A DNA stretch of 64,000 nt from Octopus sinensis. Lineage: Eukaryota. Below the pieces are notes generated by a model, which saw only the letters and a program-made list of their open reading frames with translations, was not told the origin of the DNA and made no database searches. Of this stretch, positions 4,836 to 22,305 are shown in pieces. The stretch spans positions 42,160,001 to 42,224,000 of the forward strand of contig NC_042998.1 of NCBI RefSeq assembly GCF_006345805.1. The letters run 5' to 3'. The position numbers and the translations under genes were made by a program. Position 1 is the stretch's first letter. Every line of letters starts with the position of its first letter.

Positions 4836-5050
4836 GCTTTATTTGATAACCAGTTGATCTAGCAAGCAGGGCCTCATATCAGTGAGCGGGAGGGGTAGTG
4901 CACATTGATGCTGTCGAAAGGTAGGCCCCGAAACTGTGCATTCTCTTCTGATGATTCCATACACTTGCTGGCTTCCGGTATGCAGAGTTCTCAACTGGTA
5001 GCACTTGCATGTGCAAGTTGTTTGCAAAACATTTATGCCACATTTGACTA

Positions 5051-5345
5051 TAATAATAATAATAATAATTGTGTACAGTGCTCAGGTGCACTACAACTCA
5101 TCTAAAGTGTATATATAATCAGGTGTAGTTTCGGCGGATTTCGGAAAGCATGAGGGCCTTAAAGGATGCAGTGTCATGGCAGTCAACAACTGACGCAGGC
5201 AGTTTATTCCATGCTTCAGCAACTCTGAGCGTGAAAAAATGTTTCCAAAAGTCATGGGAGCTGTGTTGTTTTCTGACTTTGTAGGCATGTCCACGTGTGT
5301 TAGACACATGGAGATCAAAAATGTGTTCACACACAAGACATTGGA
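5051..5345 (-). mobile_element. CR1-clade LINE 3' end with (ATT)n tail
   Basis: Reverse complement of the 3' end of the 6.4-7.2 kb LINE (FFTLRVAEAWNKLPASVV). Confidence 0.8.
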
Positions 5346-6394
5346 CATGCTCTTTTCTCATCAGATATCATCCAAAAAAATCCCATCTAGAGAGTTATTT
5401 AGGGGTGACAAAATAAATACCAGTTCATTTGCCAATTTTAAAATACACTATCTATAGTGGTGTATAATACATATCTGTGGCTGTTTATGTTTGAGTGCCC
5501 AATTGACACAAAACTTACAAAACCCTTGCAAAATCAAAGAGCTCCACAATATTTTCCTAATTCCAAAGTATTTATTAACAGATACTATTCATATATTTTG
5601 CAAACATCTTCAAATTAACTTTCATTGTTGTACATTTTTGCTCTTATTTACATCCACATGCTTAGATGTACAATTATATGCATCTATGCACATATACACA
5701 CTCAGCTATGTAGAGAAACAGTTATTAGCATACTTCTTCACATATGAATATTCTCTCTATCATAAAATGCAACACAGACTCACATGACCCTCGGGTGGCA
5801 GACAATCTGTTTCTTAAGTTAACACTACTGCCTGGCCCTTGGGAGTTGAGTTCGTGTTCCAAGCATTCAGCTGTCTTTGGTCAGAAAAATTTCCTGCTTT
5901 TCTCTTACAAGCCTTAGAGACTCTGAAAAGAGCTATAGTCTCTATCCTTTTAGATGCACCATAGAAAAAAAAAAAACCCACACCCCACACAAGTTTTGTT
6001 TTTCCTCACATGTACTCTCTCTCATACACACTACATATATCAGATGCAAAGTCTCACAAAATCACCTTGCCATTATTTAACCCAGTGACCTGTTACAAAT
6101 GCCCCACTACAGCACATCCCATTCATTAATTAAGACCCCAATGTTAATCCAGTCACATTCTCAACTTCCATGTATCATCAGTCACAGTCATATTATCTAG
6201 GCTTGCACTGCGACATATTTAATATTCTTTTTATTCTTCTTCACTCAAACATCATCATCATCATCAATGTTATTTTTGTTGTCGCTCATTATGCTGGTCT
6301 GTGCAATTACTTGTAATTTGTGGTTCTCAGTACATTCCACATACTTAGCATTTCAAGAATCAATGTTGAAGATTGTAATCTTTTTACTATAAAG

Positions 6395-7190
6395 ATACCC
6401 TTCCCAGCGTCCACCTACTCCCTCCACAACACTAGTCTCAAAAAGTCTTCAAGTGAACGTGACCTGGGTGTTATTGTCGACAGTGATTTGCGTTCGAAAA
6501 AACACATCGCCAAAATTGTCAAGAAGGCTGAGAGTGTCTTGACATCACTCACCAAATCCTTTGTGAGCCGCTTTCCGGCTATCTATCTGCGGCTTTATAT
6601 AGCTATGGTAAGACCTCACCTGGAATTTGCATCACCGGTCTGGAACCCCTATCTTACCCAGGACATCAATCGTCTGGAAGCTGTTGAGCGACGTGCAACC
6701 AAAAGAATACCCTCCATCAGGCATTTGCCATATCCTGAACGCCTTACTTCCCTGGGCATGGACACATTGAAACTCCGACGTCTGGCAGCTGACCTGGCAG
6801 ACACCCATAAAATTATCAACCATTGTACAAACAATAACACTGAGCACCTCTTCAAACTCCACCCATGGACATATTTACAAAGTAAGAAAACAGCACAGCT
6901 CCCATGACTTCAGGAAACATTTTTTCACGCTGAGAGTTGCTGAAGCATGGAACAAACTGCCGGCATCGGTTGTTAGTTGTCGGAGCACTGCATCCTTCAA
7001 GACTTCCATGCTTCCTTAGATTCGCCAACACTACACTTGATTTTCTCCTCTCCATACACACACAAGCATGTTCACTTTCCAGACATTTCTACATTACTGC
7101 ATGTACTTTATATGCACTTTCTGACAAGTTGTGGTGCACCTGAGCACTGTATACAATAATTTCATTATTATTATTATTATCACCATCTTT
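6395..7190 (+). mobile_element. CR1-clade LINE, RT C-terminus plus 3' UTR and (ATT)n tail
   Basis: ERDLGVIVDSDL...MVRPHLEFASPVWNPYL...LEAVERRATKRIP...YPERL (ORF 6320-6907), a typical CR1/L2 motif string. Confidence 0.9.
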
Positions 7191-9378
7191 AACCGATTTG
7201 ACAAGTAAGGTACTTTATTTTGCTTGACTTTCTTACACTGAAGCCAACAAACAACTAAGCTACTGTATATGTGGAAAGAAACATTCATGTATGTTCATAG
7301 ACACACATATATAACTATTCATCTATCCTCTTGTATTAAAAAGAAATCTCAACAAAATTAAATATTCTTTTCTACACTAGGCACAAGGCCTGAAATTTTG
7401 GAGGAGGGGGGGGCAGTTGATTAGATTGACTCCAAAAGAATGAAAGGCAAAGTCAACTGCGGTGGAATTTGAACTCAGAATAAAAAGACAGATGAAATAC
7501 TGCTAAGCATTTCACCCGACATGCTAACATTTCTGCCAGCTCACCGAAAATTAAATATTCGTCACCAAAATAACAAAAAGATAAGAAATAATAACAAATT
7601 CAAGTTTATGTTTAATTGTAGCTTTTATGTAGAGAATATACAGGTAAAGGTCTTCAGAGATATTCAGTTAGCTAGAAATAGAAATAGAAAAGAAAAATAT
7701 TGAAATATAAGCAATTTAAGAGGATATTACGATCATTGCCAAGAGACAATTTTCAAGTATATTAAGTTTAATAAAGACTAAAAATTTTGCAAATGGCACA
7801 TGTTATAATTCATACACAGTGTTTATTTTTGCTCTATCTTCTTCCTTCTTGTTTATGATTTCCAATAGCAGTAGTTACATTTTACACATTCCAAATGCAT
7901 CCAATTGTACTATATTTGATAATCAACATTCTCCTGGACATTGTTCACCATTTTTGAATCTTGAATCCCAAATTGTTAACAGAAAGTTCATCTATCTGCA
8001 GTAATCTAATATCCAAAAAAAAAAAAAAAATCCCTATCAGATTAAATATTAATTTAATAGGGATACCTTGATCATTTACTCCATCTCTATGTCCCACTAA
8101 CTGTTAATTGAATTTTATCAAAAGATTTGAATACCTCATATCTAACAAGTATGAATATTCTAAATGGATTTAATACTAACAACAGGAGATACATTTAGAT
8201 GTGATAATTAGATGATGATTAATCAGAAATAGTAGTTTTTTTAAATAAATTCTAGGAGATGTGTCACAGCATGGCAAAGAAAAGCAATTGTAAACTGGAA
8301 AAGTCATAAGTACCAAGCTTTTTTAAGATAACTAAATTTATTAAACCTATTAATGCCAGCTTCTCATAGACCTTAAGTACACAACTGCCGAAACTTCTAC
8401 TACTAACACTTTCACAGAAACCTCTCAACAGTTCAGCAAGACTTTGAATAAAGTTAGCAATCCCTTTCTTTGAATAAAATAATGCTAAAGTGTAAAGATT
8501 TTTCCAGAAAACTTATTAGTAAATAACACCTGCAAACCAGTCATTTACACATACTAACACTTATACATATTCATGTTATAAAATGTAAAGCCTCCTTAGT
8601 CAGTAGGTAGTTTCAATCTGCACTTGAGACAATCAGTAAATAAGTTCCCATTAGTCAGATTATCAGCTAGCAATAAAGTCCCAATTAGGTAGATTATCAT
8701 TTAAGCTGTCAGCCAGCCAACTAGTTAACACTCTGAGTTCAACCCAATAACTACCACTTGTCCATAGTTAATCAAGTTCCTCAGATTCCACAATTGAATT
8801 AAGTCAGTCTAAAAAACCAGATACTCTTTCAGAGAGCCAATGGGGTAAGGCAGCTTCTACATGGTTGCTTGGAATAACTAAATTTCCCTAAATTTACATC
8901 CTAACGAAGGGTACGTAAAAGAAGAATACATTGAACAATATAGTTTTAGACACACAAAATGATAAGGTGTCATAGCTAAAACACTTTTGATAATGACCTG
9001 CATCATCAAGTCTGACTTGGAGGCTATAAAGCAGTTATGACCATTCATATAAACTCACTTTCAGTTCAAATATATACGTGATTCTAGTGAATAATATTCA
9101 TTTTCCAGTTACCCCAATCTTCTTAATAATTTCTTTTGATAAAAACTCAGAATTAAAAATGTTGGACTTTTTTAGGAGCTGTTGATAAGCTTGTTGTGTT
9201 ATGTTTCCAACAGTAATTTAAGAATGATGAACATCAAGTTACACACCATCTGAGAATAAACTGTAAATGCTGAAAGAAAATACTTACAGACATATGATTT
9301 GCACATTGATCGTATGAGAACAATAAACAAATGAAGAATGAAAGGAATTATACTTTGCAACTTTGCAGTGGGTTATAT

Positions 9379-9788: not shown

Positions 9789-10615
9789 GGTTAAATCTGA
9801 GAGTGAGGCGATAAAAATTAAAAAAGAATTCCATTCCCAATTCATGGAGGAGTTGTTATCAGTCACAGGAACATAAAGTTGCAGAAACAACTATTCCAAC
9901 AAATAAACCAGTCCATCATTAGCAAACATGAACAGTCATAAAACATTGAATAAAAAAAATTTTTAATGGTCAAAAACTACAATCCATGAAAGATACTGAA
10001 TTTTGACATTATAATCCAGCAAGCAAAAATTAGTGGAAGAAAATTATGAGACAAAAAAAAAAAAAAAAAAGATGAATGTTAGGCAGCATTTTTTCTAGAA
10101 TTTAAGTTGAATCTTTCAGACCAAAAAAAAAAAAAGAAAAGAAAAGTGGAGAGGTCAACTTATACACCAAGACAACTCTGGAGGACCCAAAAATTCCATG
10201 TGAAATGCAGTTGGAAAGCTAGTGAAGATATTTGAATGCTTACATTATATGATTACTATATACCACATCAACTTGTATGCTGGAAAATATGGTAAGTAGA
10301 ATCTATTTCAGAAGTAGCTATATAATTCATACCGGATCAAATCATTACTTTTGTAGCATTTGGAAAATGGATTTATTTTAACTCGACAAATTTTGGCAAC
10401 AGTAGAAAATTTGATTTAACTATACACAACCTGTTACCAAGAAGGAGTGAATCAAGTCAACATAAAACATAATATACTTCACAATTAAGCTGTACAATAT
10501 GGTTTAGTGTTTCTTATATGCAGTTCCATTTCTGCAAACATTTGAAATTTAACAAAATAAAAAGTTTTTTTAAGGAAGAGAGAATACTTAACATACATAC
10601 TTTAACAGGAACCGC

Positions 10616-10734
10616 TTAAACTGTCACTGCCACTTTCTTCCTTTTCTTCTTCTTTTTTTTAAACTTACTCTCAGAGGCGTATTTCTTTTTTTTTACTGAT
10701 TTATGGCCATCATCATTTTTCTGGAATTCTTCAG
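10616..10734 (-). CDS. SURF2: Probable SURF2 terminal coding exon
   Basis: TGACAG acceptor, phase 1 compatible, (T)EEFQKNDDGHKSVKKKKYASESKFKKKKKKRKKVAVTV* as assembled. With one exon-4 copy the CDS is 648 nt (215 aa). The true stop may be 10602-10604 (see findings). Confidence 0.65.
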
Positions 10735-10812
10735 CTGTCAAAGATGTTGAGATAAAAAGATAATCTTTCAAATGTGTTAAAAACAAAAATTTCTGCATGT
10801 CATGTGATTACT

Positions 10813-12407: not shown

Positions 12408-12816
12408 AGCTCAGGTCGGAGCAGATATATACACGAGGCATACCCAATTTTTAATTTTCTCCTGTTTACGGAATTAATCTTTATTTGCGGTAGAAGCTTT
12501 GGCTGTTATTTCTAGTGGGTGAATGGCCTATTATGGCCGTTCCTTAATTGTTAATGTTGAACTTAAAAATGGTCTATGACTATTTAATTTTTTTCCCGCT
12601 GGGCCGCTGGTGGCAATAAAATTCTACAAAATTTTCCTTGCCACCCTATATTGATTAATATGAATTTTTTGGTTAATTCCGTAATGGAATCGACGGCTGA
12701 TATTTATTTGCTGCCGATAAATTTGGCGCGAGTGCGACGATTTGAAAATTTTAGGTCAGATATTGACTTGGCAAGATTGGGTATGCCTCGTGTATATATC
12801 TGCTCCGACCTGAGCT

Positions 12817-12923
12817 ATTTCTTGCTGAAGAATCCGAGGGCTTATGGAAGATTGGCTTGATTTAATTTAATCAGGTTAGCTTACCATTAAACAGCGGATG
12901 AAACGGTATACCGTACAAGAAAT
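12817..12923 (+). ncRNA. Type I hammerhead ribozyme, intact core
   Basis: Stem I 12817-24/12916-23, CTGAAGA 12825-31, stem II ATCCG/CGGAT, GAAA 12900-03, palindrome ACGGTATACCGT 12903-14, GUA cleavage after 12915. Confidence 0.88.
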
Positions 12924-13304
12924 TACAGGGTAAATGTTTTTTAAATTTTCTCCTGTTTACGGAATTAATCTTTATTTGCGGTAGAAGCTTTGGCTGTTAT
13001 TTCTAGTGGGTGAATGGCCTATTATGGCCGTTCCTTAATTGTTAATGTTGAACTTAAAAATGGTCTATGACTATTTAATTTTTTTCCCGCTGGGCCGCTG
13101 GTGGCAATAAAATCTACAAAATTTTCCTTGCACCCTATATTGATTAATTATGAATTTTTTGGTTAATTCCGTAATGGAATCGACGGCTGATATTTATTTG
13201 CTGCCGATAAATTGGCGCGAGTGCGACGATTTGAAAAATTTAGGTCAGATATTGACTTGGCAAGATTGGTATGCCTCGTGTATATATCTGCTCCGACCTG
13301 AGCT

Positions 13305-13409
13305 ATTCTTGCTGAAGAATCCGAGGGCTTATGGAAGATTGGCTTGATTAATTTAATCAGGTTAGCTTACCATTAAACAGCGGATGAAACGGTATACCGT
13401 ACAAGAAAT
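13305..13409 (+). ncRNA. Type I hammerhead ribozyme, intact core
   Basis: CTGAAGA 13312-18, GAAA 13386-89, cleavage after 13401. Stem I has a 1-nt deletion. Confidence 0.85.
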
Positions 13410-13792
13410 TACAGGGTAAATGTTTTTTAAATTTTCTCCTGTTTACGGAATTAATCTTTATTTGCGGTAGAAGCTTTGGCTGTTATTTCTAGTGGGTGAA
13501 TGGCCTATTATGGCCGTCCTTAATGTTAATGTTGAACTTAAAAATGGTCTATGACTATTTAATTTTTTTCCCGCTGGGCCGCTGGTGGCAATAAAATTCT
13601 ACAAAATTTTCCTTGCCACCCTATATTGATTAATTATGAATTTTTTGGTTAATTCCGTAATGGAATCGACGGCTGATATTTATTTGCTGCCGATAAATTT
13701 GGCGCGAGTGCGACGATTTGAAAATTTTAGGTCAGATATTGACTTGGCAAGATTGGGTATGCCTCGTGTATATATCTGCTCCGACCTGAGCT

Positions 13793-13899
13793 ATTTCTTG
13801 CTGAAGAATCCGAGGGCTTATGGAAGATTGGCTTGATTTAATTTAATCAGGTTAGCTTACCATTAAACAGCGGATGAAACGGTATACCGTACAAGAAAT
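13793..13899 (+). ncRNA. Type I hammerhead ribozyme, intact core
   Basis: CTGAAGA 13801-07, GAAA 13876-79, cleavage after 13891. Confidence 0.88.
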
Positions 13900-14017
13900 T
13901 ACAGGGTAAATGTTTTTTAAATTTTCTCCTGTTTACGGAATTAATCTTTATTTGCGGTAGAAGCTTTGGCTGTTATTTCTAGTGGGTGAATGGCCTATTA
14001 TGGCCGTTCCTTAATTG

Positions 14018-14054
<37 letters not shown>

Positions 14055-14954: not shown

Positions 14955-15737
14955 GGAGCTGCCTTTGTTCAGCTTCAAACTGTCACACTACTATTGTTGG
15001 TGACCCTTCATAACACCTTCCAATCTGCATGCATTTCAAAGTCATTAGCAAGAATTTGTACATGCAACTGACGTTCCCAATGAGTCTTAGGATCATCACG
15101 TTGAAAAGAGCCCTCTTTTAGTGCACTATTTTGGCAGATGGGTGAGTTTCTTATGTAGTGAATATGTTTCATGGTTTTTGTTTTGTCACTGATGCACTGC
15201 ATACACTTGAGAATTGTTTTACTAAGAGATTGAGTTATTCAGAGTGATTCCAAAGATATATTTCAGACAGCAAACATGGAAGCTTCCAAAGTTCTTGTTT
15301 GCTTATAGTATAGTAATTATGTTTTTACATCCTTGTAACAAAGCTAAAATAACATGCTAATTATATAAAGGCTCGTTTGTAGCTTAGTCTACTAAAGAAT
15401 CTGAAACAAATGACTGAGAGAGGTAAAAAAATGAGAGAATGAAAAGTTGCTTTTCTAAAAGAAGGTTAAGAATTGAACTGAAATACACCTTGTGGGAGCC
15501 ACTATGCTGTAGATCAACCTGCTAGAAATAGCAGCCCAAATTTCCCTCCAATTACTTGCTGCTGTTGTATTTAAGGAAAGGGTACATTGGATACAGTAGT
15601 TCTACATACACCTTAAGGGATGGAATTGGCATGATTGGAATGTCTTAAATCAGAGGTTTACTTGATCAAAACTGAACAGAGATTAAACAACAAATGTTAT
15701 TTAATAAAGTCAAAACTCTGTTTCAGTAACGGCTTAC

Positions 15738-15905
15738 TTGGATAAAGATCACTTAAGCTGTCGTTATCACTTTCTTCTTCCTCATCTTCTTCATGTTTTG
15801 ATTTTTTCTTTCTTTTCTTCCCAATGTCTTTACAGTTTTCTGAACAATTAGCTTTCTGTTTCTTTGAAACTACATATTCCTTGCTCTCTTTCTGGAATTC
15901 TTCCC
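15738..15905 (-). CDS. SURF2: SURF2 exon 4, copy A (168 nt, phase 1-1)
   Basis: Intact CAG and GTAAGC sites. EEFQKESKEYVVSKKQKANCSENCKDIGKKRKKKSKHEEDEEEESDNDSLSDLYP. Whether it is used is unknown. Confidence 0.75.
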
Positions 15906-16078
15906 CTGTTAAAGATATAATAAAATCAAAACTTTTTAAAATTCATGTAAATTTAAATAAAATTACTAAGCAGTATTAGTTAATGGAACATATAGTATTA
16001 AGCCAACAGCACATTTGTGTAACGTAGCAGCTAAAATAAATGGATATTTAGTTTTTTCATTTGAAACATAAAACATTT

Positions 16079-16507
16079 TGGGCATGGATACATTGAAACT
16101 CCGACATCTGGCAGCTGACTTGGCAGACACCCATAAAATTATCAACCATCTTACAAACAATAACCTTTTCAAACTCCACCTGTGGACATGTTTACAAAGT
16201 CAGAAAACAGTACAGCTCCCATGACTTTTGGAAATATTTTTTCATGCTAAGAGTTGCTGAAGTATGGAACAAACTGCTAGCATCAGTTGTTAGTTGTCAG
16301 AGCACTGCATCCTCAAAACTTCCATGCTTCCTGAGATTCGCCAATACTACACCTGATTTTCTCCCCTCCATACACACGCAAGCATGTATCTGACTCATAC
16401 ACTGTTCACTTTCCAGACATTTGTACATTACTGCATATGCTTTATATGCAATTTTGACAAGTTGTGGTGCACCTGAGCACTGTATACAATAATTTCATTA
16501 TTATTAT
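16079..16507 (+). mobile_element. CR1-clade LINE 3' end inserted into SURF2 repeat unit A
   Basis: Colinear with 6765-7190 and ends in (ATT)n. Confidence 0.88.
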
Positions 16508-17048
16508 ATGTAAAAAAAATACTATGTCTCCTAAATATAGATAATTGAAACAAATGAAATGTTTTTTGTGTTATTTGATTCATATAAACAAGAAACATAT
16601 AAAAGTAATTTACAGAGAAAAGTTAAGTATTATGTTGGCTTGTTTTACACCTGTTATTTTCTGTGAAGACATGGACTCACCGAACATATATATTTGGGGA
16701 AAAATTTTCTAGTTAGATCCCTTTCTGTTGCCAAATAAGTGAATATATTATTCAACTGGTTTTTGAGAGTGCAAAGTTACAAGCCATATTGCATACATGG
16801 ACATCATCATTTTGCTCAGACACACCACGCAAAAATGCGGAATGTCAACGTTCAAGCACACACACACACAATATGTGTGTATGTGATGTACATGGATGCT
16901 AACAGACAATCAAAGAAGTGACAGGAGATTGAAGTAGAAAGAAATTGTAGAAAGGAGAGGATTTATGGACAAATGTCTTAAAAGTCAATCTCAGGATGTT
17001 ATTTAATAAAGTGAAAATTCTGTTTTAGTGAGAAACATCCTAACTTAC

Positions 17049-17216
17049 TTGGATAAAGGTCACTTAAACTGTCATTATCACTCTCATCTTCCTCATCTTC
17101 TTCATATTTTCGTTTTTTCTTCCTTTTCTTTCCAATATCTTCAAAATTTTCTGAACAATTAGGTTTCTGTTTCTTTGAAACTACATGTTTCTTGCCCTCT
17201 TTCGGGAATTCTTCCC
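17049..17216 (-). CDS. SURF2: SURF2 exon 4, copy B (168 nt, phase 1-1)
   Basis: Intact CAG and GTAAGT sites. EEFPKEGKKHVVSKKQKPNCSENFEDIGKKRKKKRKYEEDEEDESDNDSLSDLYP. Whether it is used is unknown. Confidence 0.75.
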
Positions 17217-18276
17217 CTGTTAAAGAATGAAATAAAATCAAAACATTTTAGTTAATGGAATATATACCAAAATCAAACTAACAGCACAGATGTGTAATGG
17301 CATAATGTAGCAAGCAAAATAAATGGACATTTAGTTTTCTTGTTTGAAACACATAAAACACATCTATTATATAAAGAAAATGAACAAAAAATCTAACTCT
17401 CCTAAAAAAACTAACTCTCACATATAATAGAAACACATGAAATGCTTTGTCTTTACACTATTTCAGTTACATAAATAAGAAATACCATAAAAGTAATTTA
17501 TGCTGAAGATTTGGTTATTTTGTTTATCTTGTTTTACATCTGCCTTCTTTCCACGAGTTCATGGAACTTGAAAATATATTTGAGGCAGTATTTTAAAGCT
17601 AGATGCTCTTCCTGTAGCAAACTCTTAACATTTTGTCAATTTAGGTCTTTGAAAGTGCAGAGAAACAGGAAGTAATGCTTGCATGGACATCACCATTTTG
17701 TTGAGATACATGATGCAAAAGTGATAGGAAATTGAAGTAGAAAGAAACTGTGGAAGGAAAGATGAGAGCTATGGGCAAAAGTAGTAAAAACTGATCTCAG
17801 GATGTTGACAAAAAAATGCAGCAGTTGTTAGAAAGGAGCCATCCAACCAATGCAAGCACTGGTTGGATGCAAGAGCACACATAAAATAGATGATGTGTAC
17901 ACTCAGTTTCCATCTACCACTTTCATTCACAAGGCACTGACTGGTTTAAGCCAATCATAGAAGACATTTGGTACCATGTGATGTAGAAGAACGATAAAAT
18001 GTAATTATGACGCTAACTCCAGACACTGTGATGGCAATTGAAATACACCTTCAGGGAGCCACTGTGTTGTGGATTGATCTGCTAAAAACAGCAGCCAAAA
18101 TTCCCCTCAAATTACATGCTACTATCTTATTTATGGAAAGAGTACATTAGATACAGAAGTCCTACATTCTCCTAAAAGCATGAAATTTGTTGGTATACCT
18201 TAGATCAGACGTCTACTTGATCAGGTTTGAACTAAAATTAATTTATTTCGTTTTAGTTAGTAACACCATAACTTAC

Positions 18277-18441
18277 TTGGATAAAGATCACTTAAGCTGT
18301 CATTATCACTTTCATCTTCACCATCTTCTTCATATTTTGATTTCTTCTTCCTTTTCTTTCCAATGTCTTCAAAATTTTCTGAAGAATTAGGTTGTTTCTT
18401 TGGAACTATATATTCCTTGCCTTCTTTCTTTAATTCTTCCC
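18277..18441 (-). CDS. SURF2: SURF2 exon 4, copy C (165 nt, phase 1-1)
   Basis: CAG|GG GAA GAA...CCA A|GTAAGT. EELKKEGKEYIVPKKQPNSSENFEDIGKKRKKKSKYEEDGEDESDNDSLSDLYP matches SURF2 SDDSMTDLYP. Confidence 0.85.
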
Positions 18442-19475
18442 CTGTAACATGTAATAAAATCAAAACACATATTTTAAAATTCTTTATGTAGACTTAAATA
18501 AAATTCTTAAACATTATTATATTTAAAGGAACATTATAGTACCAGTATTAAACTAGTAACATATTTGTAACAACCAAAATAAATAGACATTTAGTCTTTT
18601 TTAATTTGAAATATAAAACACTTCTATTATACAAAGAAAAAAAAAACCAACTTTCATTAATACAGATAATTGAAACAAATGAAATATTTCATATTTCCAC
18701 TTGTTTTTGCACTATTTGAGTTACATAAATAAGAAACATTATGAAAGTAATTTATCCTGAAGAGTTGGTATTTTGTTTCTCTCGTTTTACATCTGCTTTT
18801 TTTCTGATGTTAAATGTATATGTGTGTGTTTGTATGTGCTCTTGTCTTGACATCATGCGATAATTATAAAACAAGCATCATCGTTATACAGCAGGTTGCT
18901 TTCAGCCTTCTGTGAAAAATGTTTGGCCGAGAGGAAATACTAGCTAGCCTGGAAATAGGTGATGGTTGGCGACAGGAAGGGCATCCAGTTGTAGAAAAAT
19001 TTCCTCTCAATAAGTTCCGTCTAACCTATGCAAGCGTGGAAATGTGGATCTTGAAAACGGGGGTGATGAAACAATAAAACAGAAAAATAGGAAGCGTCTT
19101 TATTTCGTATCTAAGAGTGACCTCCCTTGTGGGACGTCAACGTATCGGAACCAAATTTTGCTTTAAAATTTTTGTGTGTGCACCTGTGAATATGTAAAGA
19201 TAAAATAGGTCCCGAGTTAAAACTTATAGCAAGCATTTATATTCTAGCAGATAAGTTCTAAACAGAACAGACTTCAAAGTAGTAGATTTCCGACAAAGGT
19301 GTCTACAAAGCCAATCCTGAATCGATTTGCACATGTTAATGCTATAAACTATTTGTAATTTACATAGCAAAAGGGAAAGAGAGTGAAAGAATCATTAGAG
19401 ACTCCAGTAGTAAAGAATTCATAATGCTAACAATTTATATGATACGTTTTCTGATTTCTGTAAAGGAAAACTTAC

Positions 19476-19579
19476 ATTTCTTAAAAGCTTTTTGGAATTT
19501 GCGCCCATTAATATGTTTTTGTAAGGAAGACTGTAAATTGTTGATATATTTATATGTCAATAAACACAGCAGTTGATTT
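19476..19579 (-). CDS. SURF2: SURF2 exon 3
   Basis: CAG acceptor, 104 nt, (K)NQLLCLLTYKYINNLQSSLQKHINGRKFQKAFKK(W), GTAAGT donor. Phase 2 in and phase 1 out fit its neighbours. Matches QLFCKLT..HIN..H..G.RYQ.AL. Confidence 0.92.
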
Positions 19580-19963: not shown

Positions 19964-20530
19964 CAGGGTTTGGACAAAATAATAGAAACACCTTAAAATT
20001 TCAAACAAATTTATCTTAATATGGATTTGCACTGCCTTTGGCAGTAATTACAGCTTGAATTCTACGAGGTATGGACTCATACAAAGTTTGAATTGTTTCC
20101 AAAGGAACTTTTGTTCATTCTTCAGCTAAAACAGTCTCCAGTTCTTGTAGTGATAATATTAGAGAATATTGACAACTTACTTGTTTTTCTAAAATGCACC
20201 ATAAATGTTCAATAATATTGAGATATGGGGACTGTGGTGGCCAGATAAGATGTTCAAGTTCACTAGAATGTTCCTTTTGCCATTCAATAACAACTTTAGC
20301 TGTGTGAATTGGTACGTTATCATCCTGAAAGATTGCATCTCCCTTTGGAAACAGTTCCACAACCATAGGATGAATTTGATCAGATAAAATGTTCAAATAG
20401 TCTTGACTATTAATTCTGCCATGAAGGGAAACCATTAGGCTGGCGGATTTCCAAGATATAGCCCCCCACCAGATCCTCCTGCATGTTTAACAGTTGGAAG
20501 AAGGCAGTCTGGGTCAAATGCTTCTTTTGG
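19964..20530 (-). mobile_element. Tc1 transposon fragment (DDE domain plus one TIR)
   Basis: ORF 20115-20435, FQDDNVPIH...WPPQSPYLNIIEHLW. TA-CAGGGTTTGGACAAAATAAT TIR at 19964. Confidence 0.88.
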
Positions 20531-20678: not shown

Positions 20679-20836
20679 TTGGGAAATCTTTTTGTACTGT
20701 CAACGAGGTGTTGTCTGTATTTGTCATAATCATAATCATTAAGTGCCTTGAGTCTTTTGTGTTTTTTCCCATGAAGGTAACTGTTCACAACTTTTGCATC
20801 ACATGACATTTCATGGCCAGATAGACTACATTTGAT
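20679..20836 (-). CDS. SURF2: SURF2 exon 2
   Basis: TAG acceptor, 158 nt, IKCSLSGHEMSCDAKVVNSYLHGKKHKRLKALNDYDYDKYRQHLVDSTKRFP, GTAAGA donor. Matches the SURF2 motif VRCxLTGHE..Y..GKKY. Confidence 0.92.
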
Positions 20837-22206: not shown

Positions 22207-22305
22207 CTTGTCATTTTCAGATAAATACTTGAGGTGGCTATTTTCCGACAGAATTTCTTGTATCTCTGCAGATAATGTTGGTGAATTATTCACGTCGATA
22301 GCCAT
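22207..22305 (-). CDS. SURF2: SURF2 (Surfeit locus protein 2) coding exon 1
   Basis: ATG at 22305, 99 nt, MAIDVNNSPTLSAEIQEILSENSHLKYLSENDK then GTATGT donor. Resembles the SURF2 N-terminus (human [20 protein letters not shown]). Confidence 0.88.

What the first reader, a model, noticed from the sequence alone, without database searches (positions are those of the whole stretch)
15480..18810. SURF2 exon 4 is triplicated, with all copies open, splice-competent and frame-symmetric
Seen: three paralogous exons (168, 168 and 165 nt; phase 1-1), each with CAG and GTAAG sites and no stop. The only exonic indel is one whole codon, while the co-duplicated flanking intron sequence is visibly more diverged, indel-rich and in one unit interrupted by a CR1 insertion. 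Tandem joining reads in frame (SDLYP-R-EE). Inference: selection keeps the copies coding, giving either mutually exclusive exons or isoforms with 1-3 repeats of a basic NLS-like (KKRKKK) plus acidic SDLYP module (215 to 326 aa). SURF2 is normally single-copy and binds free 5S RNP, so module multiplication would be unusual.
Basis: partly seen in the sequence, partly recalled or inferred. Interest (0 to 1): 0.75.

Follow-up and report, generated by a model that had tools for sequence, protein, structure and literature searches.

The report
Triplicated SURF2 exon in octopus
The octopus SURF2 gene has three tandem, still-coding copies of one exon, so its protein repeats a conserved tail motif three times; this is real and under selection, but it is an ordinary exon duplication already present in public gene models.

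Summary
On the minus strand lie three paralogous exons: 18441-18277 (165 nt), 17216-17049 (168 nt) and 15905-15738 (168 nt). Each is open in phase 1-1 and bounded by cag|...|gtaag. Exon identity between copies is 88.5-89.1% with one codon-sized indel. The co-duplicated intron flanks are 74-80% identical and indel-rich.

The window is Octopus sinensis. Splicing all three copies gives exactly RefSeq XP_029658162.1 (SURF2 isoform X1, 326 aa). Isoform X2 skips the middle copy. O. bimaculoides and O. vulgaris carry the same three exons, and a fourth octopod carries at least the middle one. Argonauta hians has one.

Coding constraint is supported. All ten octopod copies are open, every exonic indel is a multiple of three, and post-duplication changes are 23 synonymous to 32 non-synonymous (omega about 0.27). 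The SDNDSLSDLYP motif varies only at synonymous sites.

The gene models point to tandem inclusion with cassette skipping, not mutually exclusive exons. The module is the end of the structured domain followed by a disordered stretch that carries the DSLSDLYP motif, which is invariant across the family.

Only octopus proteins among 167 SURF2-family sequences repeat this motif. I found no paper describing the triplication. No RNA reads could be checked here.

The parts
18277..18441 (-). SURF2 exon 4 copy C (165 nt, phase 1-1). It is the first copy in the transcript and encodes EELKKEGKEYIVPKKQPNSSENFEDIGKKRKKKSKYEEDGEDESDNDSLSDLYP.
   Evidence: It is part of every annotated isoform. Orthologues are at L001 6784-6948 and L004 7838-8002.
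17049..17216 (-). SURF2 exon 4 copy B (168 nt, phase 1-1). It is skipped in O. sinensis isoform X2 and in the O. vulgaris model.
   Evidence: Orthologues are at L001 8053-8202 (150 nt, in-frame 18-nt deletion), L004 9010-9177 and L003 335-493 (159 nt).
15738..15905 (-). SURF2 exon 4 copy A (168 nt, phase 1-1). It is skipped in O. bimaculoides isoform X2.
   Evidence: Orthologues are at L001 8935-9102 and L004 10340-10507.
15476..18806 (-). The whole triplicated block, exons plus co-duplicated intron flanks. Upstream flanks are about 18806-18442, 17806-17217 and 16994-15906. The long downstream flank is shared by C (18276-18036) and A (15737-15476).
16086..16506 (+). Interspersed-repeat insertion (LINE 3' tail) of about 420 nt in the B-A intron. 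It is specific to the O. sinensis lineage.
22207..22305 (-). SURF2 exon 1, from the ATG at 22305.
20679..20836 (-). SURF2 exon 2.
19476..19579 (-). SURF2 exon 3. It ends in phase 1, and the T|GG junction gives Trp before the first module.
10616..10734 (-). Terminal coding exon (EEFQKNDDGHKSV...KKVAVTV, then stop). It shows weak collinear similarity to the module at both ends.

Best explanation
This is a tandem triplication of SURF2 exon 4, restricted to the Octopus lineage and made by two unequal-recombination events with different breakpoints. It arose after the split from Argonauta and before O. sinensis/vulgaris, O. bimaculoides and a more distant octopod diverged. Because each copy is phase 1-1, a multiple of 3 in length, and keeps consensus splice sites, all three are spliced in series into the main mRNA. 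The result is a 326-aa protein. Its normal N-terminal SURF2 domain is followed by three 55-56-residue repeats of a disordered module. Each module has a short EEF/L-x-KEG start (the end of the last helix of the domain), a KKRKKK basic cluster, an acidic run, and the SDNDSLSDLYP motif that is invariant across the family. Copies B and A also behave as cassette exons, each skipped in some models, which gives two-module isoforms. Purifying selection acts on the copies. What is shown: the anatomy, the phylogenetic distribution, the coding constraint, and identity to the annotated isoforms. What is inferred: that repeat number matters, in that it multiplies the valency of the DSLSDLYP linear motif and of the NLS-like basic patch, and that splicing adjusts that valency.
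For: The spliced CDS equals XP_029658162.1, and C+A equals XP_036368566.1. O. bimaculoides has three-module and two-module models, and the same 320-aa protein is also listed as UniProt entry A0A0L8H114. O. vulgaris has all three exons intact. A Logan genomic contig from another octopod, about 82% identical, carries an open B copy followed by the B-to-A intron. Argonauta hians has a single exon 4. Paralogue dN/dS is 0.21-0.27. On post-duplication branches there are 23 synonymous and 32 non-synonymous changes; P = 6e-6 for an expected synonymous fraction of 0.162 and P = 0.005 for 0.25. There are no nonsense changes where about 4 are expected (P about 0.014). The three exonic indels (3, 18 and 9 nt) are all multiples of 3, against 6 of 25 intronic indels. 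Exons are more conserved than introns both between paralogues and between orthologues, 96.3% against 93.8%, P = 0.036. The SDNDSLSDLYP codons differ only at three synonymous third positions among 10 copies. DSLSDLYP is invariant in 19 SURF2 proteins from molluscs to fish. AlphaFold gives residues about 5-135 as structured, with helix 112-127 crossing the exon 3/4C junction, and residues 140-326 as disordered.
Against: No RNA reads or cDNA were examined. Inclusion of the copies rests on gene models from annotation pipelines. Nucleotide-level constraint is modest. For copy C alone the synonymous/non-synonymous count (3/7) is indistinguishable from neutral. The exon-versus-intron contrast for single orthologous exons is not significant on its own. 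The function of the DSLSDLYP motif is unknown, and the disordered half of human SURF2 could not be assayed (PMC11436901), so the valency idea is untested. The order of the two duplications is unresolved, because all three exon pairs are about 11-12% diverged.
Confidence: 0.78

Rival explanations
1. Tolerated, functionally neutral expansion. The three exons are all spliced in, but repeat number has no function. Selection only removes stops and frameshifts, which would truncate the protein or trigger NMD, and the disordered tail simply tolerates the extra length.
For: The module is predicted to be disordered. The nucleotide constraint is weak: orthologous exons are 96.3% identical against 93.8% for introns, and B against the distant octopod is 90.6% against 86-88%, not significant. 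In-frame deletions of 6 and 3 codons are tolerated in copy B. Either B or A is dispensable in some isoforms.
Against: An omega of about 0.27 shows constraint at the amino-acid level, not only avoidance of stops. SDNDSLSDLYP and KKRKKK are unchanged in all ten copies while synonymous sites inside them vary. Copies B and A start with EEF, so each internal junction re-creates the family-wide DLYP-x-x-x-F context.
Confidence: 0.15
2. A mutually exclusive exon cluster, in which each mRNA carries exactly one of C, B or A.
For: There are three similar exons of the same phase in tandem, which is the usual origin of such clusters. A 14-nt AT-rich complementarity links 18125-18138 to the regions upstream of B and C.
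Against: The main gene models in two species include all three copies. The alternative models include two. No single-copy isoform is in the collection. Lengths are multiples of 3, so joint inclusion keeps the frame. The introns are 1060 and 1143 nt, so there is no steric block. The inverted repeats are short, imperfect and AT-rich.
Confidence: 0.03
3. Only one or two copies are real exons. The remainder are pseudo-exons joined in by homology-driven or ab initio gene prediction.
For: No transcript reads were seen here. The O. vulgaris model omits B, and the models in different species disagree on which copy is skipped.
Against: All ten copies in four genomes keep the frame, the cag acceptor and the gtaag donor. 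There are no nonsense changes and only in-frame indels. B and A, the copies skipped in some models, each show an excess of synonymous change on their own: 13/15 (P = 0.0002) and 7/9 (P = 0.009) at a neutral synonymous fraction of 0.162; at 0.25 the values are 0.011 and 0.08, so A is then marginal. As far as I recall, alternative Gnomon isoforms require transcript alignments.
Confidence: 0.04

Closest known systems
SURF2 of other animals (human SURF2; Pfam PF05477)
   Same: It has the same N-terminal structured domain, including the invariant G56 K57 K58, H76, S80, K82, L89, C91, L93 and T94. It has the same exon-4 content: the end of the domain, a basic/acidic disordered stretch and the invariant DSLSDLYP.
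   Different: All other family members examined carry at most one [ST][DE]L[YF]P motif: 60 have one and 101 of the 167 have none (fragments or more distant relatives). Octopus has two or three depending on isoform. The Cys of the conserved EEC at the start of exon 4 is Leu or Phe in Octopus. Compared with Argonauta, the octopus protein ends inside exon 5 and shows no exon-6 equivalent.
Tandem exon duplication producing internal protein repeats. I recall this as a general, well-documented route of gene evolution (Kondrashov and Koonin 2001; Letunic, Copley and Bork 2002); I did not check those papers here.
   Same: The copies are adjacent, on the same strand and in the same phase. The intron flanks were co-duplicated. 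The lengths preserve the frame. The event is lineage-restricted.
   Different: Nothing differs in kind. The specific point is that the repeated unit carries the most conserved linear motif of the SURF2 tail.
Mutually exclusive exon clusters (for example Dscam1 exon arrays or tropomyosin)
   Same: They share the origin by tandem exon duplication and the presence of similar exons of equal phase.
   Different: Here the copies are included together in the annotated mRNAs. No mechanism that would enforce exclusivity is visible.
Argonauta hians SURF2 (286 aa)
   Same: The gene is orthologous and sits next to the same neighbour, a gene encoding an Ax_dynein_light-domain protein. Its exon 4 has the same boundaries, cag|GGGAAGAA...CCAA|gtaag.
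   Different: It has a single exon 4 of 201 nt with a longer acidic run, followed by exons 5 and 6.

Membership tests
SURF2 (Pfam PF05477) | Whole-protein match to the family profile above the curated cut-off | tested here: met
   136.1 bits against a cut-off of 25, residues 13-195. Exon 2 alone scores 31.6 bits.
SURF2 (Pfam PF05477) | Conserved N-terminal structured domain and the invariant DSLSDLYP motif in the tail | tested here: met
   The invariant columns appear in the 19-sequence alignment. The domain is modelled with pLDDT of about 75-92 over residues 11-130. The motif is present three times.
SURF2 (Pfam PF05477) | Identity with an already named SURF2 gene product | tested here: met
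   The spliced CDS translates exactly to XP_029658162.1, 'surfeit locus protein 2 isoform X1 [Octopus sinensis]'.
SURF2 (Pfam PF05477) | Binding to free 5S RNP through RPL11 and RPL5 | not testable with these tools
   This is known only for human SURF2, where the structured domain 1-136 does the binding (PMC11436901).
Tandem exon duplication | Adjacent homologous exons with the same strand, the same phase and frame-preserving lengths | tested here: met
   Lengths are 165, 168 and 168 nt, phase 1-1, with 88.5-89.1% identity.
Tandem exon duplication | Homology extends into the flanking introns, showing duplication of a genomic segment | tested here: met
   The flanks are 74-80% identical with many indels.
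Tandem exon duplication | A single copy in an outgroup | tested here: met
   Argonauta hians has one exon 4, and no further copy was found in its locus.
Mutually exclusive exon cluster | Exactly one copy per mature transcript | tested here: not met
   At the level of annotation, X1 contains all three copies and X2 contains two. None of the three single-copy proteins is on record. RNA reads were not examined.
Mutually exclusive exon cluster | A mechanism enforcing exclusivity, such as a frameshift on double inclusion, a too-short intron, or docking/selector RNA pairing | tested here: not met
   Lengths are multiples of 3. The introns are 1060 and 1143 nt (coordinates). Only short, imperfect, AT-rich inverted repeats were found.
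Cassette (skipped) exons | Isoforms that lack one copy coexist with the full form | tested here: met
   O. sinensis X2 is C+A. O. bimaculoides X2 is C+B. The O. vulgaris model is C+A, although its copy B is intact in the genome. This is annotation-level evidence only.

The most novel reading that the evidence does not exclude
Octopus has turned SURF2 into a multivalent adaptor. On this reading the family-invariant DSLSDLYP motif is a partner-binding, probably phospho-regulated, linear motif. Its triplication, together with the NLS-like basic patch and splicing that sets the copy number at two or three, would change how free 5S RNP is buffered or where SURF2 sits in the nucleus. The octopus gene would then be a natural experiment that identifies the functional element of the otherwise uncharacterised disordered half of SURF2.
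Probability: 0.12. Interest if true: 0.5.

Novelty: new member of a known kind. Interest (0 to 1): 0.3.

Why it matters
The practical value is small but real. The disordered C-terminal half of SURF2 has no assigned function, and it could not be assayed in the one mechanistic study available (PMC11436901). The octopus triplication, taken with the invariance of DSLSDLYP from molluscs to fish, marks this motif and its basic/acidic surroundings as the part of the tail that selection acts on. That gives a concrete element to mutate or multiply in binding and localisation assays. Otherwise this is a clean, datable example of tandem exon duplication that yields an in-frame internal repeat with cassette-type splicing. 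It is useful for teaching or for surveys of exon duplication in cephalopods, but it is not a new kind of system.

Tried and rejected
(1) I looked for direct transcript evidence. All seven copy combinations plus the zero-copy protein were looked up by exact sequence. Only C+B+A and C+A exist, both from the NCBI genome annotation, and there were no Logan transcript contigs. A profile search with the module alone returned only one genomic Logan ORF and one weak, unrelated hit.

(2) The species behind the Logan run SRR11869384 could not be identified. No paper cites it.

(3) The literature searches found one mechanistic SURF2 paper and nothing on SURF2 in cephalopods.

(4) The CR1 label for the intronic insertion was not confirmed. 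Pfam found nothing in the longer copy's ORF. The motifs in that ORF resemble LINE ORF2 tails only as far as I recall.

(5) The inverted-repeat scan found nothing convincing for docking/selector RNA pairing.

(6) A search for an equivalent of Argonauta exon 6 in the window gave no tblastn hit.

(7) A full reconstruction of the order and breakpoints of the two duplications was abandoned. The three exon pairs are equally diverged, and the flanks give mixed signals: A and C share the long downstream flank, while A and B share the far upstream flank.

(8) The region upstream of copy C (18830-19130) was checked as a possible dispersed repeat. Only two 35-nt matches were found elsewhere in the window.
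Full report
**What is there**

The region 15476-18806 contains three direct-repeat units whose cores are spaced 1311 and 1228 nt apart. A BLAST of one unit against the window finds the other two and nothing else.

Read on the minus strand, each core is an exon-like segment preceded by cag and followed by gtaag. Each is open in one frame only. Copy C is 18441-18277 (165 nt), copy B is 17216-17049 (168 nt) and copy A is 15905-15738 (168 nt). All three are phase 1-1. Joining one copy to the next makes the codon A|GG, which gives ...SDLYP-R-EEF...

**The gene**

Upstream exons lie at 22305-22207, 20836-20679 and 19579-19476. A terminal coding exon lies at 10734-10616. Exon 2 alone matches Pfam SURF2. 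The full product matches PF05477 at 136 bits against a cut-off of 25.

The spliced seven-exon CDS translates exactly to XP_029658162.1, 'surfeit locus protein 2 isoform X1 [Octopus sinensis]', 326 aa. Leaving out copy B gives exactly isoform X2, XP_036368566.1, 270 aa. The window is therefore O. sinensis, and the three-module protein is already in RefSeq and UniRef. Isoform X3 has an alternative N-terminus and also contains all three modules. None of the three possible single-copy proteins, the zero-copy protein, C+B or B+A is on record for this species.

**Distribution**

O. bimaculoides has the same three exons at L001 6784-6948 (165 nt), 8053-8202 (150 nt, with an in-frame 18-nt deletion) and 8935-9102 (168 nt). 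Its models are a 320-aa three-module protein, also present as UniProt A0A0L8H114, and a 264-aa isoform that skips copy A.

O. vulgaris has all three exons intact in the genome (L004), although its deposited model skips B.

A 1.1-kb genomic Logan contig from run SRR11869384 (species not identified) is about 82% identical to the B unit. It runs colinearly from upstream of B into the B-to-A intron and carries an open 159-nt B exon with intact splice sites.

Argonauta hians has a single exon 4 with the same boundaries, 201 nt, followed by exons 5 and 6. No extra copy is present in its locus.

The triplication therefore arose within the octopod lineage leading to Octopus, after the split from Argonauta. 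It predates a divergence of about 14% substitutions in introns.

**Is it under selection?**

Between paralogues in the window, the exons are 88.5-89.1% identical with one 3-nt indel. The upstream flanks are 76-80% identical with 11-13 gap openings per pair, and the downstream C-A flank is 74% identical.

Between O. sinensis and O. bimaculoides orthologues, the exons are 96.3% identical and the surrounding introns 93.8% (P = 0.036 pooled). No single exon is significant on its own.

Nei-Gojobori dN/dS between paralogues is 0.21-0.27.

Parsimony on eleven sequences gives 23 synonymous and 32 non-synonymous changes on the branches after the duplication. The neutral expectation is about 1 synonymous to 5 non-synonymous. 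P is 6e-6 for that expectation, and 0.005 if a quarter of changes were synonymous. By copy the counts are:

| Copy | Synonymous / non-synonymous | P (neutral fraction 0.162) | P (neutral fraction 0.25) |
|---|---|---|---|
| B | 13/15 | 0.0002 | 0.011 |
| A | 7/9 | 0.009 | 0.08 |
| C | 3/7 | 0.21 | 0.47 |

Copy C is therefore uninformative.

About 7.5% of possible substitutions in these Lys/Glu-rich exons would create a stop codon. None of the 55 inferred changes did (P about 0.014). The three exonic indels (3, 18 and 9 nt) are all multiples of three, whereas only 6 of 25 intronic indels are.

Inside SDNDSLSDLYP, the ten octopod copies differ at three nucleotide positions, all synonymous third positions. 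KKRKKK is also unchanged in all ten copies.

Taken together, the copies are kept as coding sequence. The constraint is moderate, as expected for a disordered region.

**What the module is**

An AlphaFold model built on a 19-sequence alignment gives a confident domain over residues about 5-135. Its last helix, 112-127, runs across the exon 3/exon 4C junction. Everything from about residue 140 to 326 is low-confidence and without secondary structure.

Each module therefore consists of the last few residues of the structured domain (EEF/L-x-KEG), a basic KKRKKK patch, an acidic run and SDNDSLSDLYP.

In the family alignment, D-x-L-S-D-L-Y-P is invariant (the second residue, Ser, is conserved in at least 90%) in all 19 sequences, from molluscs, a brachiopod and echinoderms to fishes. 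It is the only invariant element of the C-terminal half. A Phe four residues after the Pro is common. In Octopus, copies B and A begin with EEF, so each internal junction reproduces the ...DLYP-x-EEF context that the last copy has with exon 5.

Among 167 SURF2-family proteins, including 150 representatives of 50%-identity clusters, only the six Octopus sequences carry more than one [ST][DE]L[YF]P.

For human SURF2, the published work shows that the structured domain 1-136 binds RPL11 and RPL5. The disordered part could not be tested because it was unstable (PMC11436901). The duplicated part is therefore not the known 5S RNP-binding part. From general knowledge, the S-x-x-D/E spacing within SDNDSLSD fits casein kinase 2 sites. 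This was not tested.

**How it most likely works**

Two successive unequal recombination events copied a segment of about 0.9-1.25 kb around exon 4. Copies A and C share a long downstream flank, and copies A and B share a far upstream flank. The three exon pairs are equally diverged, so the two events were close in time and their order is unresolved.

Because the exon is symmetric (phase 1-1, length a multiple of 3) and each copy keeps strong splice sites, serial inclusion is the default outcome. The annotated main isoforms in two species show exactly that. Copies B and A are skipped in some models, which is cassette behaviour.

Mutual exclusivity is not supported. No single-copy model exists, joint inclusion keeps the frame, the introns are 1060 and 1143 nt, and the inverted repeats in the region are short, imperfect and AT-rich.

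The idea that three motifs give higher valency for an unknown partner, or stronger nuclear targeting, is an inference. The main rival is that the extra length is simply tolerated.

**Comparison and novelty**

This is a standard tandem exon duplication that creates an internal repeat in a disordered region. It is lineage-specific and already present in public gene models. I found no paper that mentions it. It is a new documented member of a known kind. Its modest value is to point to DSLSDLYP as the functional element of the SURF2 tail.

**Limits**

No RNA reads were available. The gene models are indirect evidence for splicing. The species of contig L003 is unknown. The CR1 label for the intronic insertion is unconfirmed.

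Noticed in passing
window 10616-10734 (-), with its flanks at 10560-10800: The terminal coding exon shows collinear local similarity to the duplicated module at both ends. At the acceptor and first 17 nt, ATCTTTGACAGCTGAAGAATTCCAGAAA matches ATCTTTAACAGGGGAAGAATTCCAGAAA in copy A. At the 3' end, GAAAGTGGCAGTGACAGTTTAAG matches GAAAGTGATAACGACAGCTTAAG. The exon reads the 3' part in a different frame and stops at TAA, 19 nt before a gtatg that sits where the Argonauta donor is. The Argonauta exon 5 peptide also aligns to the octopus modules. This may be an older, degenerate relative of the module, or it may be low-complexity resemblance.
   Followed up: partly
window 10616 and downstream (-); L002 11701-11796: Argonauta SURF2 has a sixth coding exon (DDGLVIRNIPNSEITFRKKKRHRKKKAAQT). 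No equivalent was found in the octopus window. The Octopus proteins end inside exon 5 (KKVAVTV) in both O. sinensis and O. bimaculoides.
   Followed up: partly
window 12448-14022: A 490-bp tandem repeat of 3.2 copies at 98% identity lies inside the 5-kb intron between copy A and the terminal exon.
   Followed up: no
window 20115-20435 (-): A remnant of a DDE_3 (Tc1/mariner-type) transposase ORF lies in SURF2 intron 2 (Pfam PF13358, E = 1.4e-10).
   Followed up: partly
window 6320-7174 (+) and 5049-5361 (-): These are longer and fragmentary copies of the same interspersed repeat that is inserted in the B-A intron. The 195-aa ORF at 6320-6907 looks like the C-terminal part of a LINE ORF2, but Pfam gave no hit.
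   Followed up: partly
window above about 23500; L001 1-784, L002 1-614, L004 1-2316: In the three fetched loci the gene upstream of SURF2, on the opposite strand, encodes a protein of about 1126-1229 aa with an Ax_dynein_light domain. It is head-to-head with SURF2 in O. bimaculoides, O. vulgaris and Argonauta. The window aligns with the O. bimaculoides flank at 24677-23533, so the arrangement appears conserved. No SURF1 was seen next to SURF2, unlike what I recall of the vertebrate surfeit locus.
   Followed up: no
position 3 of each module (window 18433-18431, 17208-17206, 15897-15895): The Cys of the motif W/Y-E-E-C at the start of exon 4 is present in 16 of the 19 aligned SURF2 proteins; the two Octopus sequences and one N-terminally truncated Physella sequence differ there. 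In Octopus it is replaced by Leu in copy C and Phe in copies B and A. The unidentified octopod's copy B reads EQS there.
   Followed up: no
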